Below, piece by piece: positions 1,076 through 41,474 of a DNA stretch of 64,000 nt. Origin of the DNA: Octopus bimaculoides (Eukaryota); contig NC_068986.1 in the NCBI RefSeq assembly GCF_001194135.2, positions 64,450,190 through 64,514,189 of the forward strand, given 5' to 3'. Position numbers and translations under genes: made by a program. The notes below the pieces were generated by a model. The model had not been told where the DNA came from. It ran no database searches and worked only from the letters and a program-made list of their open reading frames with translations. Within the stretch, counting starts at the first letter, position 1. Every line of letters starts with the position of its first letter.

Positions 1076-1479
1076 AAATATCCTATGTAAAAATATTATA
1101 TGTAGAAACTGGAAGAGAGGGAGAGTGAAGGAGATAGGGTGGGATACTCATTTGAACACTCCTCTTGCAGGTTTTTTCACAGGGGTGGGAGATTGAGAAA
1201 AACACCAATTAGGGAAGGGAGATCACTACAATGGCAGGTTGATCATCTGCAGTAGCCATTGTGAAGGTGAGAGAAATATATTTGTATTTTTGGCTTAGCA
1301 TCAAGATCATATAACTTTTTACAGGTATGCCATTAGCTTTTACATGCAGACAACTGTAAGCATGGACAAGAAATTGGTACAGTGGTTATTGTGATCAATT
1401 TTCACATATTTTTACAACTTTCTGCATGTGATTTCACCCCCCCCCCCATTCCTTAGTGGTGTCTTTTTTCTTGAGGTAC

Positions 1480-4080
1480 CCTACTGTCCCTATACTGGAA
1501 CACTTGATTGCACCTTTATTGGGCATGGTGTTCCAAGTTAGGTACAATGTGTTTCAATATAGGGGCATTTTCTAATAGTCTTATTTAGTGTGTGACATAA
1601 ATATTAGCCTATACATAATGAACTTTGAAATTTCTTCACAAAATCAGTTGGAGGAAAAAAGACATTTCAGTTCACCTACAGTTTTGTCTAGACAAGAAGA
1701 GGATTTGGTGCATCACATTCTTTCACTGGAAGAAATGCTGTTTGGCATATCTAAAACTACTGTGCAGGAACTGTTGTCTCAAATTGCTTTGAAAAACAAT
1801 GCAGAACTTTTACACAAGTTCAATGGAGAAAGCAATGTGCAGGCTAGGAACAGTTTTCAAAGTTTCTTACCAGAAACCCTCATCTCAGTCTTCAAATACC
1901 TGAGGGTGCCAGCATAGCAAGAGCTACAGGGTTTAGCAGAAAAGTGTGAATAGGTTCTTTGACATCCTTGAGACAGTTCTTGACCATAACAAACTGGATG
2001 CATCTAGCATGTATGAATCATCTCTCAGCACTGTGCAGAAACCTGGAAAAATCATGGCAAAAAAGGCAAACAACAGGTAGATGCAGAAAGAGGAACCAAT
2101 GTCACATGTGTTAGCTGCATGAGTCCAAGTGGTTACTTCGTCTTTCCATTTGTGATCTTCAAACAAAAATGCATGAAGGAAGTCCTCAGAACTAGTACCC
2201 CTGCTGGAACAGGATTTGCAGTGCAGGAATAATGCTGGATGGATAAAGACACTTTCTGCATGTGGTTTAAAAACTTCATCAAATACACTAAACCTTCAAA
2301 GGATGCACTTGTCCTTCTTGTCCTTGGTGAGCACATAAGTCACACAGAAAATCTTCAGGTAATTGAAATTGCCACTGAACATGGAGTGCTGATACTCTCT
2401 CTTCCACTGCATTGTAGTCATCACATGCAGCCACTTGACTTCACTTGTTTCAAGCCCCTCTCTGCATACTTCAATCAGACTGCAGACAGATTCATGAAAA
2501 TTCATCCTGGATCAAGCATTCAGACAGAAAATATTGCTGGACTGCTTGCAGAGGATTTCAACCATGCTTCAGTGGTGGCCACAGTTGGGATTTAGCCACC
2601 AAATCGACATGTATTCACAGATGCTGACTTCATCACAACTTCAGAGGCAGCTGTTAAAAACAGAGAGCCTGGAAACCAGAAGGACTGCAGCTTTGAACAA
2701 CTTGAAACAGGCCAAAATGATGTCCATGATGAAGATCACCTGGGAAAGCATTTGAAAAAGGTCTGTCCGGCAAACCTACCTGTAGTCCACAGCCTCCACA
2801 GCAAGCTCAGCTCCAAATACCTCAGACGTCTTCACTTCCTAATGACATGCTTCAAGAAATTGAAATGTCCCCACAGATTGTAACAATGTTACTTCTTCCA
2901 GAGCATTGTGATTTGCATAAAAAGTGAACTTCAAATCACTCCGCAGTCAGCAGGCAGAAGTGCATCTTCAGGATTGGTTGAACTGAAGGAAACAGTTCTG
3001 GCAGATAGCCTCGGGCTGGTTGTTATGTCATCAATGCTAGCAAACATGGATGAGCTTCATGACTTGCTTGGACCAAATCAGTCAGAGATCATAAATTCTG
3101 ATGTGTCTGACCACATCCATTCTGTAAGCCTCAAGTATTGTATGAGACACATGTCGACCCCCAACTGCCACATAGGTGAACTGGAGATTGCTGCAACAGC
3201 AAAACACTTGGGGAAGACAATCATTATTGTCAGCAAGGATTTGCAAGTTATCAATGTTTACAATGATGAATACAATAGACAGATCAATAAATGTGTTGTG
3301 GTTGCCTTGACAAGGTTGGAGACAACATTGGACATTACAATGCTTTTCTACCACAGAACAGTTCTGATGGCACCACAGAATTTCAAGGAAGTGCACCAAA
3401 CAACAGCAGTGACTCTGGGAATGAATATGCAATGGTTTCACAGCCAGTCAACACCAGACCTCCAAGTAAACGTCCCAGAGAATTGTTGCAGATGATATCA
3501 TCCATTATTAAGAAAATTACCCAAGATCAATGGGAAATGCCATTGCCAGCAAACAGAGCTCACTGCATGAAGCCTATACAAGAAAAGGCTTCAAGATATG
3601 AAAGGTAGAAAAAAGACTTGCAGACAAACCAAACAAAAGTCTACCATGGCCAAGCAAAATGAAGTGAACAGTTGGTTTTATTTCATCTGTGGTGAAGACA
3701 TTCAAGAAAGCATGACACAGTGCTGATAGGTGCACATCAAATAAGCAGATCAAATGAAGCTGTTGAAATATGTGCGTGATGTGTGTTTGTAAACGCCTGT
3801 TGGTTTGACCTGAGAATTATAAGACAACATTTTTAATTTACCATTCACATTTGTTATATATCTGTCTAATGACCTATAAATTAAGTTTTTATTTTCTATT
3901 TGCTGAGATTTGTAACAAGTATTTCAATAAATTTATATTTTACATTTTACATTAGTCTTATGAATTATTTTATTGTTGACTGTTATTAACTATTATTAAT
4001 CCCCTTATATAAATGTGTATGCCGAATATAGGGACAGAAGTGTCTCTAATTAGGAACCACATTCCTAAATTGAAACACTT
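1480..4080 (+). mobile_element. Pogo/Tigger-type (DDE_1) DNA transposon, decayed; transposase with CENP-B-type HTH, DDE, OTU-like domain and PHD finger
   Basis: HTH region 'EEDLVHHILSLEEMLFGIS..'; 'PEGASIARATGF'; 'STVQKPGKIMA'; 'ERGTNVT'; 'VLLVLGEHISH'; 'LPLHCSHHMQPLD'; 'GI*PPNRHVFTDADF'; C-terminal 'ICGEDIQESMTQC**VH...KYVRDVC'. A GTGTTYCARTWTAGG-like motif is repeated near both ends. Stops and frameshifts throughout. Confidence 0.9.
2860..3350 (+). pseudogene. OTU (ovarian tumour) cysteine-protease-like domain embedded in the pogo transposase
   Basis: Cys-loop remnant 'gat tgt aac aa tgt tac ttc ttc cag agc att' (D-x-N-C-x-F-F-Q-S-I, 2876-2907), 'Y..RHM...HIGELEIAATAKHLGKTIIIV' (3135-3230) and His-loop 'VGDNIGHYNAFL' (His codon 3333-3335, after a frameshift), in canonical OTU order. 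Confidence 0.75.
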
Positions 4081-4469: not shown

Positions 4470-5540
4470 GGGCCTGAACTAGGGGTTTTTTGACACACAG
4501 AATCTAAAAGTAACATCCTGTTATTACTACCATATCAAGATTTTAAGATACTGGATCTCAAGAATTTCATTCCTTTTTTCAATAAAACAGCTTAACAAGG
4601 CAGACATAACATACAAACATACATACATAGAAATTGGCTTTTCTTCAAAACCAGGCTGTTTCCTTAAATTCCTACTGAAAAACTAGTAAAATTCTTAAAA
4701 TTTCTACAGACAAATTACATCATTGTTTATTCTAAATTTCCCATGAATTTGCATTTGCATAATTTTCTTGAGTACTGAAGCTCAGGAAGCTCATGAGCCA
4801 AATTCCAGCAACAATCTGCCATTATGTGCAAGTCCCGTCTGCCTTGATACTTTTTTTCCATTGATTTTACGTCCTGATGGAAATGTTCTCCCCGCTCATC
4901 ATTTGTGTCACCAAGATTTTCAGAGAATTTATCAAATTGACTGTGGAGACACTGCAGCTTTATGCTCATATTTGCTCCCAACTTTTGAAAGTTCTCCAGC
5001 ATGTTATCAACTATTTTGGAATAGTTGGCTGCTTATTGCAAATGAATTCCATGTTACTGTTTCAGTTCATTTCATAGAATTTACAAAATTCCCATCTTTC
5101 ATTAATTTTCTGATTTGAGGCTCATCAAATACTCCAGTTTTTATCTTTCTGTTTCTTGGACCAAGAAATATGCTGCAGACATAATAAAAGCATGGTCCAT
5201 CTTTATCCAGAGCTTTAACAAACTGTTTTATAATGCCAGTTTTGATGTGGAGTGGAGGTAGGATAAGTTTTCCAGGTTGAACTAAAAATACCTTGGAACT
5301 AATGTTTGCTGTGACCATTCTTTGATTACCCAATGTTCTTCCCTGGCTCTGCTGTCCCACACACATAAATATTATAGCTATTTCACAGGTAAACAATGCA
5401 TTTTTCTGAAATTTGAAGAAAATTACAAAAATTGGAGTGGGGTTGGGTGAGGTTAAATCTAGGTGTGATGGTAAAAAATGAATTCCGTTTATGGAGTCCG
5501 CATATCAAAAAACTATAAAATCAGATATAAACGTCCTAAC
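4470..5540 (-). mobile_element. Internally deleted DNA transposon, probably Chapaev3 (CMC superfamily); C-terminal half of transposase
   Basis: ORFs 5396-5067 ('LPPLHIKTGIIKQFVKALDKDG...GVFDEPQIRKLMKD') and 5002-4727 ('NMSIKLQCLHSQFDKFSENLGDTNDERGEHFHQDVKSMEKKYQG...MADCCW'). Related subterminal sequences lie in inverted orientation at ~4480-4550 and ~5455-5535. Superfamily assignment is from recalled motifs. Confidence 0.65.
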
Positions 5541-40289: not shown

Positions 40290-41474
40290 CACAGACATGA
40301 CAAAAGTAAATAGACACCCCATAAATCATCGTTTTATGTTTATTCTAACTCGTAATGGTTTATATTTTTTATTAATTGACATTTCTATGTTTCAGGTTCT
40401 ATATGTGACTTTTTAATCATAAAGAAGCCTTGGAGCTGTCTGAATTTCAAAGAAGCCGTATTGTGGACCATTCTGAAGATGGACATAATCAGCGTAATAT
40501 CACAGAAAACCTTGGGATCCCGCTTTCTACATTTAATACAGTGATTGTGCAATTCACCAGAGAGGGGAAGGAGTCCACATCATCTTGCCCAGATCAACCA
40601 GGGCCCTCTGACAAGACCCTTCTCTTTGCTAAAAGAAGTGTGGAGGATAATCCTCGTTGCAAGACCTCTGTCATAGCAGAACAAGTTGATGTCAGTTCCA
40701 GAACAGCTATCAGATATCTCCACAAACTTGGTAACTATTTTGGTTACTATTGCAGAGCAGCAAAAAGGAAGCCACTTCTTGACCAGTCAACATCAAGCGG
40801 AGAAAAGATTGGGCCAGTGAGATGGTGGAGGGGCCGCTAGCATTTTAGGACGTTGTCATATTCTCGGATGAGTCCAGATTTACTGTATTTCATGACAGTG
40901 GTCGAGTGTGGGTCTGGAGACTCTCTGATCAAGAATTTGATATGAAAAGATTGCAGCCAACAATGAAACATGGCAGCTATTCTGTGATGGTCTGGGGAGA
41001 AATTTGGAGCAATAGTTGATCAGAGCTGGTGGAGTGTGAGGGAAACAAACTCAGATAAAAATGTGTCCATATTGCACAAAGGCCTCATTCCAATCTTCTC
41101 CAGTGGTAAAATGATTAAAGAAGATTATTTATGTAAAATAGGGACCCTTGCCTCATGGCTGAGATTTGTTGGATGAGAATGGCATTAAACAACTTCCATG
41201 GCCAAACCTGTCACCAGATAGGAACCCTTTGAACACCTCTGGGACATAACGGACAGGACACTTAATAAAAAAAATAAAAGAAAGCATCTTTAAAGCCAAA
41301 TCTTTTGAGATTACTGCATGAAACTTGGCGAGAAATTCCGCCAGAGAATATTCGTCATCTGATCAGTAACATGCCTTATAAGGTGCTTGCATTGAAAAAT
41401 GCAAAGGACGTGTTTACTAAATATGAAATAGATTCTAATGATTATAGGTGTGTCTATTTATTTCTGTCATGCCA

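What the first reader, a model, noticed from the sequence alone, without database searches (positions are those of the whole stretch)
1588..3795. Pogo-type transposase carrying an OTU deubiquitinase-like domain between the DDE domain and the PHD finger
Seen in sequence: the domain order is HTH, DDE_1, linker, OTU, basic stretch, PHD. The OTU shows all three diagnostic elements in order: Cys-loop remnant (D-x-N..C-Y-F-F-Q-S-I, 2876-2907), 'IGELEIAATAKHL' helix (3172-3210) and 'IGHYNAFL' His-loop (3327-3350). The DDE ORF (2239) and the OTU ORF (2908) are in the same frame, separated only by stops at 2593 and 2881, with no TIR, TSD or poly(A) scar around the OTU. Established: this pogo subtype normally ends DDE-linker-basic-PHD, and OTU or Ulp1 protease cargo is described for Helitrons and Ginger elements. 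I do not recall it for pogo. Inference: a transposase coupling a chromatin reader (PHD) to a deubiquitinase, which might remove histone or transposase ubiquitin to steer integration or evade degradation or silencing. This copy is decayed and inactive.
Basis: partly seen in the sequence, partly recalled or inferred. Interest (0 to 1): 0.88.

Follow-up and report, generated by a model that had tools for sequence, protein, structure and literature searches.

The report
Pogo transposon relic with OTU protease domain
This is a dead copy of a cut-and-paste (pogo-type) transposon whose transposase natively carries an OTU deubiquitinase-type domain and a PHD chromatin-reader finger, a combination found in many copies in snails, limpets and a hagfish but not described in any paper I could find.

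Summary
Window 1657-3790 (+) is a decayed pogo-superfamily transposase gene reading Tc5/CENP-B-type HTH, DDE_1, linker, OTU, basic motif, PHD. The Cys-loop, GELEI helix and His-loop motifs are at the stated coordinates.

The OTU is not a one-off insertion. A composite of the closest relatives aligns to window 2038-3786 as a single +1 alignment (41% identity, E=1e-124).

A profile search found 161 relatives. At least 13 representative clusters have the pogo DDE upstream of the OTU. About 25 have the pogo basic/PHD tail downstream.

Taxa named include Littorina saxatilis, Patella caerulea and Myxine glutinosa.

OTU identity is firm:
- Relatives exceed the Pfam gathering score (38.5 bits).
- The family profile hits solved OTUD5 and Otu2.
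- An AlphaFold model (pLDDT 86.7) matches only OTU deubiquitinases.
- The Cys and His are near-invariant, and dN/dS is about 0.25-0.35.

The C-terminal finger is a C4HC3 PHD.

One intact OTU-less relative is a secondary in-frame deletion that still transposed (TA duplication, matching empty site).

Transposon-borne OTUs are known in Ginger1 and Helitrons. I found no report for pogo. Deubiquitinase activity and role are inferred. I rate it a new variant of a known kind, of moderate interest.

The parts
1210..1237 (+). Candidate outer left terminal inverted repeat with TA (TA|GGGAAGGGAGATCACTACAATGGCAGG). Uncertain.
   Evidence: Resembles the family TIR TA|GGGGAAGGGGCCCTGTATTGGGCATG seen in L003 and L004. 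There is a 10-nt exact match to the L005 left end. No convincing right-hand partner was found.
1478..1566 (+). Left subterminal repeat block: three copies of a ~19-nt motif (TGTCCCTATACTGGAACAC, then GTGTTCCAAGTTAGGTACA and GTGTTTCAATATAGGGGCA in the opposite orientation). Probably transposase-binding sites.
   Evidence: Collinear with L003 9742-9830. Same motif family as L001 4967-5013 and L004 5080-5108. Inverted partners lie at 4019-4078 (pair I4).
1657..2077 (+). Remnant of the Tc5/CENP-B-type HTH DNA-binding region, split over three frames (1657-1869 frame 1, 1830-1943 frame 3, 1937-2077 frame 2). The upstream psq-type HTH (about 50 aa) is deleted. The first catalytic Asp is lost (NMDET to MYES, Tyr codon 2012-2014).
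   Evidence: 52-54% identity to P0001 residues 52-196. P0001 and P0002 hit HTH_psq and HTH_Tnp_Tc5. The window piece itself gives no Pfam hit at E<=1.
2038..2667 (+). DDE_1 catalytic domain, frame +1. In-frame stops at TAA 2230-2232 and TAG 2593-2595. The second Asp is changed to Gly (2326-2328, LDGH to LGEH). The third Asp is kept (GAC 2437-2439, QPLD).
   Evidence: Pfam DDE_1 E=5e-14. 55-57% identity to P0001 and L001.
2668..2875 (+). Linker between the DDE and OTU domains. It begins 'ITTSEAAVKNR', collinear with the L006 linker.
   Evidence: alignment. In relatives the linker is low-complexity and prone to tandem expansion (L002; Littorina P0029/P0160).
2876..3350 (+). OTU cysteine-protease domain remnant.
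- Cys loop D-C-N-(+2 nt)-C-Y-F-F-Q-S-I at 2876-2907, with the catalytic Cys codon TGT at 2887-2889 and stop TAA at 2881-2883.
- GELEI helix at 3172-3210.
- His loop IGHYNAFL at 3327-3350 in frame 0, with the His codon CAT at 3333-3335.
   Evidence: Pfam OTU E=0.0048. 53% identity to P0017 with E=2e-39, and 36% to P0003. Family-level OTU proof.
3496..3672 (+). Basic region carrying the conserved 'CQQ-E-L/I-TSSPYKK' motif (here CQQTELTA*SLYKKRL) and a Lys/Arg-rich stretch, frame +1. Stops at 3496-3498 and near 3569.
   Evidence: Aligns to P0001 386-460 and to P0003, P0017 and P0021 tails.
3673..3790 (+). Decayed PHD-type (C4HC3) zinc finger, WFYFICGEDIQESMTQC**VHIK*ADQMKLLKYVRDVCL*. The first Cys is changed to Tyr (3679-3681), there is a short deletion, and it carries three stops.
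   Evidence: Aligns to P0001 762-803. In family alignment A5, C6 C9 C20 C23 H28 C31 C47 are invariant and C44 nearly so. The profile hits solved PHD fingers down to E=5e-9.
4019..4078 (+). Right subterminal repeat block (ATGCCGAATATAGGGACA, TGTCTCTAATTAGGAACCAC, ATTCCTAAATTGAAACAC). The outer right TIR was not identified.
   Evidence: Match to the family motif TGCCCAATATAGGG: score 12 against a shuffle maximum of 11. Matches L003, L004 and L005 right ends. Inverted partner of 1546-1563 at 89%.

Best explanation
Window ~1478-4078 (coding part 1657-3790, + strand) is a dead copy of a pogo-superfamily (Tigger/pogoR-like, IS630-Tc1-mariner) cut-and-paste DNA transposon.

Shown:
- Its single transposase ORF natively reads HTH, DDE_1, low-complexity linker, OTU-family cysteine protease, basic 'TSSPYKK' motif, PHD finger.
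- The OTU is an inherited, selected part of the transposase lineage. It is not a nested insertion or a captured fragment in this copy.
- The family moves as pogo elements do, with ~26-31-bp TIRs and a TA target duplication.
- This copy cannot move. Two of the three catalytic Asp residues are lost, both zinc-finger and OTU coding are broken, and the psq HTH is deleted.

Inferred mechanism for intact family members:
- The OTU is an active thiol isopeptidase for ubiquitin or a ubiquitin-like modifier, delivered to chromatin together with the transposase by the PHD finger and the DNA-binding domains.
- There it removes ubiquitin marks that would otherwise send the transposase to the proteasome, or that signal at the excision or integration break.
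- This would raise the yield of transposition. It is not needed for the chemistry of transposition, because a natural in-frame OTU-less derivative has inserted.
For: Architecture and collinearity:
- Searches give one +1 alignment over window 2038-3786 (41% identity, E=1e-124).
- L001 is near-intact: 860 aa with one frameshift and one stop.
- L002, L004, L005 and L006 keep the order DDE, OTU, tail.

Family breadth:
- The profile search found 161 proteins at E<=1e-3.
- Representatives include P0029, P0034, P0035, P0045, P0066, P0024, P0051 and P0060, which have the pogo DDE before the OTU, the pogo tail after it, or both.
- Taxa named by the sources are Littorina saxatilis, Patella caerulea and Myxine glutinosa.

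OTU identity:
- Pfam OTU scores 38.5, 30.3, 29.2, 28.1 and 27.8 bits in relatives, against a gathering score of 23.3.
- 30 of 33 domain sequences hit OTU, best E=4.6e-11.
- The family profile hits solved OTUD5 (6e-5), Otu2 (1e-4), Otu1 and OTUD3.
- The AlphaFold2 model has pLDDT 86.7 and pTM 0.80.
- The Foldseek top 50 are all OTU deubiquitinases at probability about 1.0.

Selection:
- DG-C-FRS and GH are conserved in at least 90% of sequences.
- dN/dS of the OTU is 0.35 and 0.24-0.25, similar to the DDE domain.
- OTU and DDE pairwise identities co-vary, r=0.49.

PHD: C4HC3 cysteines and histidine are conserved (seven invariant, one nearly so), with hits to solved PHD fingers.

Pogo behaviour: L003 has a 31-nt TIR at 94%, TA on both sides, and a matching empty TA site in L006.

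Precedent for the inferred role:
- Ginger1 transposases carry OTU or Ulp1, one with a PHD (PMC2836005).
- Helitron-encoded VTD deubiquitinases were selected there for biochemical and structural characterisation. The authors propose that they protect transposition proteins from the proteasome (PMC9741609).
Against: - No enzymatic or transposition data exist for any member. PMC9741609 states that transposon OTU domains had not been tested for activity.
- The window copy alone does not reach the Pfam OTU threshold (17.8 against 23.3 bits), and its termini are only partly recognisable.
- An intact OTU-less derivative (P0001/L003) inserted after the flanking duplication. The OTU is therefore dispensable in cis, though it could be supplied in trans.
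- In P0045 the basic TSSPYK motif lies before the OTU rather than after it. The module has therefore been rearranged or acquired more than once.
- The substrate (ubiquitin, SUMO, NEDD8 or a cis polyprotein site) is unknown.
Confidence: 0.9

Rival explanations
1. The OTU acts mainly as a cis-processing protease, as some viral OTU or papain-like proteases do on polyproteins. It would cut the long linker to release a DDE transposase from an OTU-PHD chromatin factor, rather than acting as a deubiquitinase on host substrates.
For: - PMC9741609 notes that viral deubiquitinases often also process viral polyproteins.
- The DDE-OTU linker is long, low-complexity and highly variable.
- DDE-less OTU-PHD proteins exist as stand-alone genes in heterobranch snails.
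Against: - Reading the linkers and tails by eye, I saw no conserved Gly-Gly or LxGG-type cleavage motif at the domain borders. I ran no formal motif search.
- The closest solved homologues are cellular deubiquitinases (OTUD5, OTUD1, OTUD3, Otu2), ahead of the viral OTUs.
Confidence: 0.1
2. The OTU segment is a one-off event in this copy: a nested insertion, a captured host exon, or a neighbouring pseudogene of a host OTU-PHD gene next to an unrelated pogo relic.
For: - The window holds only one copy.
- An OTU-less relative with the same tail exists (P0001).
- DDE-less host-like OTU-PHD genes exist in heterobranch snails.
Against: - The same order and junctions occur in at least five loci from three other assemblies and in many database proteins.
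- The window's OTU and DDE domains are about equally distant from the L003/L006 family, at 53% and 56%. This is as expected for co-inheritance.
- The OTU-less copy differs from an OTU-bearing paralogue, at 96-97% identity, by one clean 887-bp gap.
Confidence: 0.02
3. The domain is a catalytically dead OTU-like scaffold kept for binding ubiquitin or partners, not for hydrolysis.
For: - Pseudo-deubiquitinases derived from transposon-borne domains are reported for the VTD family (PMC9741609).
- Pfam scores of many members are low.
Against: - The catalytic Cys in DGRC and the His in GHY are conserved in at least 90% of sequences.
- The residue two positions after the His is D, N or E in nearly all sequences (read by eye from the alignment).
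- This holds across clusters below 50% identity, which is the pattern expected for an active triad.
Confidence: 0.08

Closest known systems
Ginger1 DNA transposons (Bao, Kapitonov and Jurka 2010, PMC2836005)
   Same: A cut-and-paste DDE transposase fused in one ORF to a C-terminal OTU (PF02338) or Ulp1 protease. One family (Ginger1-9_HM) also carries a PHD finger. Found in invertebrates, including the mollusc Aplysia californica.
   Different: - The Ginger1 catalytic core is a Gypsy-integrase-like DDE with YPYY, H2C2 and GPY/F motifs. Here it is a Pfam DDE_1 pogo core with CENP-B/psq HTH domains, and relatives show a TA target duplication.
- In pogo the OTU is internal, between the DDE domain and the basic/PHD tail.
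- The OTU profile search listed only pogo-linked and heterobranch proteins among its best 150 hits. Ginger1 sequences were not compared directly.
Helitron/Helentron elements with OTU and/or VTD deubiquitinase domains (PMC9741609; PMC2836005)
   Same: A transposon ORF carries a papain-fold deubiquitinase-type domain with a conserved catalytic site. It occurs in animals including molluscs. The proposed role is to protect transposition proteins from ubiquitin-dependent degradation.
   Different: Helitrons are rolling-circle elements with a RepHel protein, no DDE transposase, no TIRs and no TA duplication. The VTD domain belongs to a different deubiquitinase class.
Canonical pogo superfamily elements (pogo, Tigger, pogoR, Passer, Fot, Lemi, Mover; Gao et al. 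2020, PMC7386202)
   Same: N-terminal HTH domains, a DDE_1 (DDD) core, short TIRs and a TA target-site duplication. The spacing between the second and third Asp is 36 residues in L001, by my count from the sequence.
   Different: That survey contains no mention of OTU, PHD or protease. Extra domains are reported there only for domesticated genes: KRAB in POGK, zinc fingers in POGZ, and a dimerisation domain in CENPB. Placement of this clade among the named pogo families was not tested.
Mutator-like elements with Ulp1 protease (cited in PMC2836005)
   Same: A DDE transposon carrying a ubiquitin-like-modifier protease of a papain-like class.
   Different: Different transposase superfamily, different protease family (Ulp1/C48, SUMO-directed), and in plants often on a separate ORF.

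Membership tests
pogo superfamily (IS630-Tc1-mariner) DNA transposon | DDE_1-type transposase catalytic domain | tested here: met
   Pfam PF03184 E=5e-14, 52.7 bits against a cutoff of 22, on window 2074-2880. 55-57% identity to P0001 and L001.
pogo superfamily (IS630-Tc1-mariner) DNA transposon | Intact DDD catalytic triad | tested here: not met
   - In the window, D1 is Tyr (2012-2014), D2 is Gly (2326-2328) and D3 is kept (2437-2439). This is decay of this copy.
- Relatives L001, P0001 and P0002 carry NMDET, LDGH and QPLD.
pogo superfamily (IS630-Tc1-mariner) DNA transposon | N-terminal CENP-B/Tc5 and psq helix-turn-helix DNA-binding domains | tested here: inconclusive
   - The window piece gives no Pfam hit at E<=1.
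- It aligns at 52-54% identity to the P0001 region that hits HTH_Tnp_Tc5.
- The psq part is deleted in the window.
- Relatives P0035, P0034 and P0066 pass the HTH_Tnp_Tc5 or HTH_psq cutoffs.
pogo superfamily (IS630-Tc1-mariner) DNA transposon | Short terminal inverted repeats and a TA target-site duplication | tested here: inconclusive
   - Met in relatives. L003 has a 31-nt TIR at 94%, flanked by TA on both sides, with an empty TA site in L006. L004 has a 26-nt TIR at 96%.
- In the window only the subterminal repeats (1478-1566, 4019-4078) and a candidate left TIR (1210-1237) are seen. No right TIR was found.
OTU cysteine protease / deubiquitinase (Pfam PF02338, clan CA) | Profile match at or above the Pfam gathering score | tested here: inconclusive
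   - The window remnant scores 17.8 bits and P0003 18.4 bits, both below 23.3.
- Homologues found with the family profile pass: P0045 38.5, P0103 30.3, P0035 29.2, P0073 28.1 and P0049 27.8 bits.
- 30 of 33 domain sequences hit OTU at E<=0.01.
OTU cysteine protease / deubiquitinase (Pfam PF02338, clan CA) | Cys loop (D-G-x-C) and His loop with catalytic Cys and His, plus an acidic or amide third residue | tested here: met
   - In A4, D5 G6 C8 F10 R11 S12 and G159 H160 are conserved in at least 90% of sequences. By eye, the residue at His+2 is D, N or E in nearly all sequences.
- The window keeps the Cys codon (2887-2889) and the His codon (3333-3335), with HYN.
- The window loop is nonetheless broken by a stop, a Gly-to-Cys change and a 2-nt insertion.
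OTU cysteine protease / deubiquitinase (Pfam PF02338, clan CA) | OTU fold | tested here: met
   - Tested on the closest near-intact relative (P0003 residues 237-415), not on the window remnant.
- AlphaFold2 gave pLDDT 86.7 and pTM 0.80.
- The Foldseek PDB top 50 are all OTU domains, led by OTUD5, OTUD3, OTUD1 and Otu2, with TM up to 0.64 and probability about 1.0.
- The sequence profile hits OTUD5 3pfy at E=6e-5.
OTU cysteine protease / deubiquitinase (Pfam PF02338, clan CA) | Isopeptidase activity on ubiquitin or a ubiquitin-like modifier | not testable with these tools
   Requires biochemistry. PMC9741609 states that transposon OTU domains had not been assayed.
PHD finger | C4HC3 zinc-ligand pattern and profile similarity to PHD fingers | tested here: met
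   - In family alignment A5, C6 C9 C20 C23 H28 C31 C47 are invariant and C44 is conserved in at least 90%.
- The profile hits solved PHD fingers PHF1 (5e-9), ARID4, PHF23 and MLL.
- Single sequences stay below Pfam cutoffs.
- In the window the finger is destroyed: the first Cys is Tyr, and there is a deletion and three stops.
Ginger1 / Helitron (the transposon groups already known to carry OTU) | Gypsy-integrase-like core (rve, GPY/F) for Ginger1, or a RepHel protein for Helitron | tested here: not met
   Pfam finds DDE_1, DDE_3, HTH_psq and HTH_Tnp_Tc5 in the window and in full-length relatives. It finds no rve, helicase or Rep domain.

The most novel reading that the evidence does not exclude
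The reading has three parts.

- Pogo-OTU-PHD elements are a third, independent transposon superfamily that recruited an active OTU deubiquitinase.
- The enzyme, tethered to chromatin by the PHD finger, counteracts ubiquitin-dependent host control of transposition (transposase turnover or break signalling) and measurably boosts transposition.
- The same OTU-PHD module was domesticated once in heterobranch gastropods into a conserved 770-1440-aa gene family.

If so, ubiquitin signalling would be a general, repeatedly targeted line of host defence against DNA transposons. The natural OTU-deleted sister element would provide a ready-made control.
Probability: 0.3. Interest if true: 0.72.

Novelty: new variant of a known kind. 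Interest (0 to 1): 0.55.

Why it matters
Protease and deubiquitinase cargo on DNA transposons is known for Ginger1, Helitrons and Mutator-like elements. Its function has never been established.

Finding the same kind of domain inside a pogo transposase adds a third or fourth independent case. Here it is under purifying selection, has a conserved catalytic dyad, and is paired with a PHD finger as in one Ginger1 family. This convergence argues that ubiquitin-pathway manipulation helps transposition.

Pogo and Tc1-mariner transposases are the easiest eukaryotic transposases to assay in cells. This family also offers near-intact copies and a natural in-frame OTU-less derivative that has transposed. 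The long-standing question of what the transposon-borne protease does therefore becomes directly testable.

The DDE-less OTU-PHD genes of heterobranch snails may be a new transposon domestication.

The window copy itself is an inert relic with no expected function.

Tried and rejected
- **Word-indexed homology search with the decayed window OTU.** 280 candidates, none significant. Using the whole conceptual protein and then the intact P0003 OTU solved this.
- **PDB profile search with the shallow 11-sequence alignment A1.** No hits. The deeper alignment A4 gave OTU hits.
- **First AlphaFold run on the shallow alignment.** pLDDT 40.9, unusable. Not used for any fold search.
- **Conceptual translation with X and a repaired frame.** Exact window pieces were used instead.
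- **Termini of the window copy.**
  - Inverted-repeat scan, short-word BLAST and local alignments recover only the subterminal motifs.
  - The best partner for the candidate left TIR (4812-4839, score 13 against a shuffle maximum of 15) is not convincing. It lies inside another element.
  - I first considered 1473-4046 or 1495-4046 as the element ends. I rejected both because these blocks align to subterminal, not terminal, parts of L003.
- **Intron hypothesis for the OTU-less P0001.** Rejected. The 887-bp segment has no GT...AG borders, only a 2-nt 'AT' microhomology.
- **Source organism.**
  - Exact look-up of window ORF 2908-3495 is not on record.
  - The ENA assembly accessions appear in no paper.
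  - The cephalopod origin remains untested.
- **No other copy of the element in the 64-kb window**.
- **Assignment to a named pogo family** (Tigger, pogoR and so on). Not attempted, for lack of reference sequences.
Full report
**1. What is in the window**

- Frame +1 runs from about 2038 to 3495, interrupted only by TAA 2230-2232, TAG 2593-2595 and TAA 2881-2883.
- The Cys-loop remnant is GAT TGT AAC (2876-2884), then two extra bases (2885-2886), then TGT TAC TTC TTC CAG AGC ATT (2887-2907).
- IGELEIAATAKHL is at 3172-3210.
- IGHYNAFL is at 3327-3350, in frame 0.
- Pfam gives DDE_1 at E=5e-14. For the OTU segment, OTU is the sole hit, at E=0.0048 and 17.8 bits, below the gathering score of 23.3.
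- The window holds no second copy.

**2. Relatives**

A search with the decayed OTU alone found nothing. The whole conceptual protein found three proteins from ENA assemblies:

- P0001: 508 aa, HTH-DDE-basic-PHD, no OTU.
- P0002: HTH-DDE plus linker.
- P0003: the end of a DDE domain, a linker, an intact OTU (GDGRCCFRSI ... GELEIVS ... IGHYNAVL), a basic stretch and the start of a PHD finger.

Their contigs show the following:

- L001 carries an almost intact 860-aa ORF with one frameshift and one stop. It reads HTH_psq/Tc5, DDE_1, linker, OTU, basic, PHD.
- L002 carries the same family, with a 48-bp linker repeat expanded to more than 2 kb.

Searching with the P0003 OTU found a dozen more fragments. 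Loci L004 and L005, from a third assembly, keep the order DDE, OTU, tail.

A profile search of 1.84 billion representatives found 161 proteins at E<=1e-3. Local domain mapping of 70 of them shows at least 13 with the pogo DDE upstream of the OTU and about 25 with the pogo tail downstream.

Full-length examples are P0029 (804 aa), P0034 (825), P0035 (751), P0045 (855) and P0066 (822). All have Pfam DDE_1 plus OTU, several with HTH and weak PHD hits.

Names given by the sources place members in three species:

- Littorina saxatilis: KAK7099863.1 and KAK7091556.1.
- Patella caerulea: KAK6191253.1.
- The hagfish Myxine glutinosa: UPI0035902D71.

**3. The window's OTU is inherited, not inserted**

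The closest OTU is P0017 on L006, at 53% identity and E=2e-39. I built a composite of P0001 plus the L006 linker and OTU. It aligns to window 2038-3786 as one +1 alignment of 637 columns, at 41% identity and E=1e-124.

The DDE-to-linker junction is conserved: window DADFITTSEAAVKNR against L006 DADFIATFLAAVEDR.

The window is about equally far from this family in the DDE domain (56%) and the OTU (53%). Across nine sequences, DDE and OTU identities co-vary (r=0.49), with the OTU evolving faster (mean 34% against 49%).

**4. The OTU-less relative is a derived deletion**

L003 (P0001) and L006 come from the same assembly. They are 96-97% identical on both sides of an 887-bp segment, present in L006 (5663-6549, linker plus OTU) and absent from L003.

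The junction shows only a 2-nt AT microhomology and no GT...AG borders. Because the more distant window element has the OTU, deletion in L003 is the economical reading.

L003 is a textbook pogo insertion:

- Its 31-nt TIRs (ATAGGGGAAGGGGCCCTGTATTGGGCATGTT) are 94% complementary.
- TA flanks both ends.
- L006 holds the matching empty site with a single TA.

So an intact OTU-less transposase gene has moved. The OTU is not needed in cis for at least one insertion, although other copies could supply it in trans.

**5. Is it really an OTU?**

Yes, at family level.

- Relatives reached by the profile pass Pfam's own threshold: P0045 at 38.5 bits and E=2e-9, and others at 27.8-30.3 bits.
- 30 of 33 isolated domains hit OTU, best E=4.6e-11. 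Otubain (C65) is the only other family hit.
- The 33-sequence profile hits solved OTUD5 (3pfy, 6e-5), yeast Otu2 (7pl7, 1e-4), Otu1, OTUD3 and OTUD1. The Cys loop aligns to EDGACLFRAV and the His loop to HYN.
- AlphaFold2 on the P0003 OTU failed with 11 sequences (pLDDT 40.9). With alignment A4 it gave pLDDT 86.7 and pTM 0.80.
- Foldseek against the PDB returned OTU deubiquitinases for all of its top 50 matches. These include OTUD5, OTUD3, OTUD1, Otu2, Cezanne, A20 and viral OTUs.
- In A4, D-G-x-C-x-F-R-S and G-H are conserved in at least 90% of sequences. By eye, the residue two positions after the His is D, N or E in nearly all sequences.
- NG86 dN/dS for the OTU is 0.35 (L001 against L002) and 0.24-0.25 (L001 against L004 and L005). 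This is close to the DDE values.

The dN/dS figures rest on few sequences, post-insertion decay and near-saturated dS. I use them only as support.

**6. The PHD finger**

Nineteen C-terminal fingers align with C6, C9, C20, C23, H28, C31 and C47 invariant and C44 in at least 90%, which is the C4HC3 pattern. The profile hits solved PHD fingers PHF1, ARID4, PHF23, MLL and Jade-1, down to E=5e-9.

**7. State of the window copy**

- The psq HTH and start codon are deleted.
- The Tc5-type HTH is spread over three frames (1657-2077).
- D1 is Tyr (2012-2014) and D2 is Gly (2326-2328). D3 is retained (2437-2439).
- Seven residues (AVKGFEK) are missing near 2590.
- The Cys loop carries a stop, a Gly-to-Cys change and a +2 frameshift.
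- The His loop is out of frame.
- The PHD finger has lost its first Cys, has a short deletion and carries three stops.
- Subterminal repeat blocks at 1478-1566 and 4019-4078 are collinear with those of L003.
- A candidate left TIR with TA lies at 1210-1237. I could not find the right TIR.

**8. How it probably works**

Shown:

- A pogo transposase lineage carries a conserved OTU fold with an intact catalytic dyad, followed by a PHD finger.
- The lineage uses TA-targeted cut-and-paste insertion.
- An OTU-less derivative is able to insert.

Inferred:

- The OTU is an active isopeptidase for ubiquitin or a ubiquitin-like modifier.
- It is brought to chromatin with the transposase.
- It removes marks that would destabilise the transposase or alter signalling at the break, raising transposition efficiency.

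This follows the proposals made for Ginger1 OTU and Ulp1 (PMC2836005) and for Helitron VTD deubiquitinases (PMC9741609). The latter paper notes that transposon OTU domains had not been assayed.

A cis-processing role is the main rival. Reading the linkers by eye, I saw no conserved Gly-Gly-type site, but I ran no formal motif search.

**9. Comparison and novelty**

OTU cargo is documented for Ginger1 and Helitrons. Ulp1 cargo is documented for Ginger1 and Mutator-like elements (PMC2836005).

- The main survey of the pogo superfamily does not contain the words OTU, PHD or protease (PMC7386202).
- Full-text searches combining pogo or Tigger, OTU or ovarian tumor, and transposase or DDE returned only the Ginger paper and irrelevant hits.
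- The fusion proteins are already in public databases, but only as hypothetical proteins.
- Repbase and Dfam could not be consulted.

I rate this a new variant of a known kind. The window copy itself is an ordinary dead transposon.

**10. Side finding**

The same OTU clade, followed by a similar C4HC3 finger but without any DDE domain, occurs in 770-1440-aa proteins of heterobranch gastropods. The genera are Biomphalaria, Bulinus, Lymnaea, Aplysia and Plakobranchus.

- They share N-terminal motifs (FLCRPAxG, CPCDVD).
- They form one clade in an unrooted NJ tree of the OTU, without bootstrap support.
- This looks like a domestication, or possibly the donor of the module.

Noticed in passing
Proteins P0049, P0050, P0073, P0103, P0121, P0123, P0128, P0143, P0168 (not in the window): Heterobranch gastropod proteins of 770-1440 aa carry the same OTU clade and a C-terminal C4HC3 PHD-like finger but no DDE domain. 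They share N-terminal motifs (FLCRPAxG, CPCDVD).

Sources:
- Biomphalaria glabrata XP_055893600.1 and XP_013074361.2, whose consecutive LOC numbers suggest neighbouring genes.
- B. pfeifferi Bpfe_029498 and Bpfe_029499.
- Bulinus, Lymnaea, Aplysia and Plakobranchus.

They form one clade in an NJ tree. They are a candidate domesticated gene family, or the donor of the module.
   Followed up: partly
L003 9380-12222 and L006 5100-5180: An intact OTU-less copy (P0001, 508 aa) is flanked by 31-nt TIRs and TA on both sides. A 96-97% identical paralogous or allelic segment in L006 shows the empty site with a single TA. L006 also carries a 5'-truncated OTU-bearing copy 144 bp downstream of that empty site.
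   Followed up: yes
L002 11400-13400; also Littorina proteins P0029 and P0160: The DDE-OTU linker is a hot spot for tandem expansion. A 48-bp unit (PESTQQQEQRNNEMAQ) is repeated over more than 2 kb in L002, against three units in L001. 'SNRTNDAF'-type repeats differ in number between the two Littorina loci.
   Followed up: partly
Protein P0045 (855 aa): The conserved basic motif 'ATVITSSPYKQKL' lies before the OTU in this protein, whereas it follows the OTU in all other members examined. This implies a rearrangement or a second acquisition of the OTU module.
   Followed up: no
L002 1-6600 (minus strand): The flank of one relative carries genes with rve integrase, a faint Pox_A32-type ATPase hit and DNA_pol_B_2. 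This is the gene set of a Maverick/Polinton-like element. I noted it from the gene table only. I neither read nor assembled it.
   Followed up: no
window 4727-5396 (minus strand): Two adjacent minus-strand ORFs (91 and 109 aa; '...GEHFHQDVKSMEKKYQGRRDLHIMADCCWNL', '...LPPLHIKTGIIKQFVKALDKDGPCF') look like the remnant of a different transposable element lying just downstream of the pogo relic.
   Followed up: no
window 59553-60158 (+), 41305-41430 (+), 34529-35152 (+): Other mobile-element debris, judged by eye:
- A mariner-like transposase C-terminal remnant ('FHQDNARSHTA').
- A Tc1/mariner-type C-terminal fragment.
- A reverse-transcriptase fragment.

The window also has many N gaps and long (CA)n/(TA)n-type microsatellites, typical of a draft repeat-rich animal assembly.
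   Followed up: no
Protein P0028 (Myxine glutinosa, UPI0035902D71): A hagfish protein of 516 aa reads HTH, OTU, basic motif, PHD with the DDE core missing. It is either an internally deleted copy or a gene model. It shows that the family reaches a vertebrate, which hints at horizontal transfer or great age.
   Followed up: no
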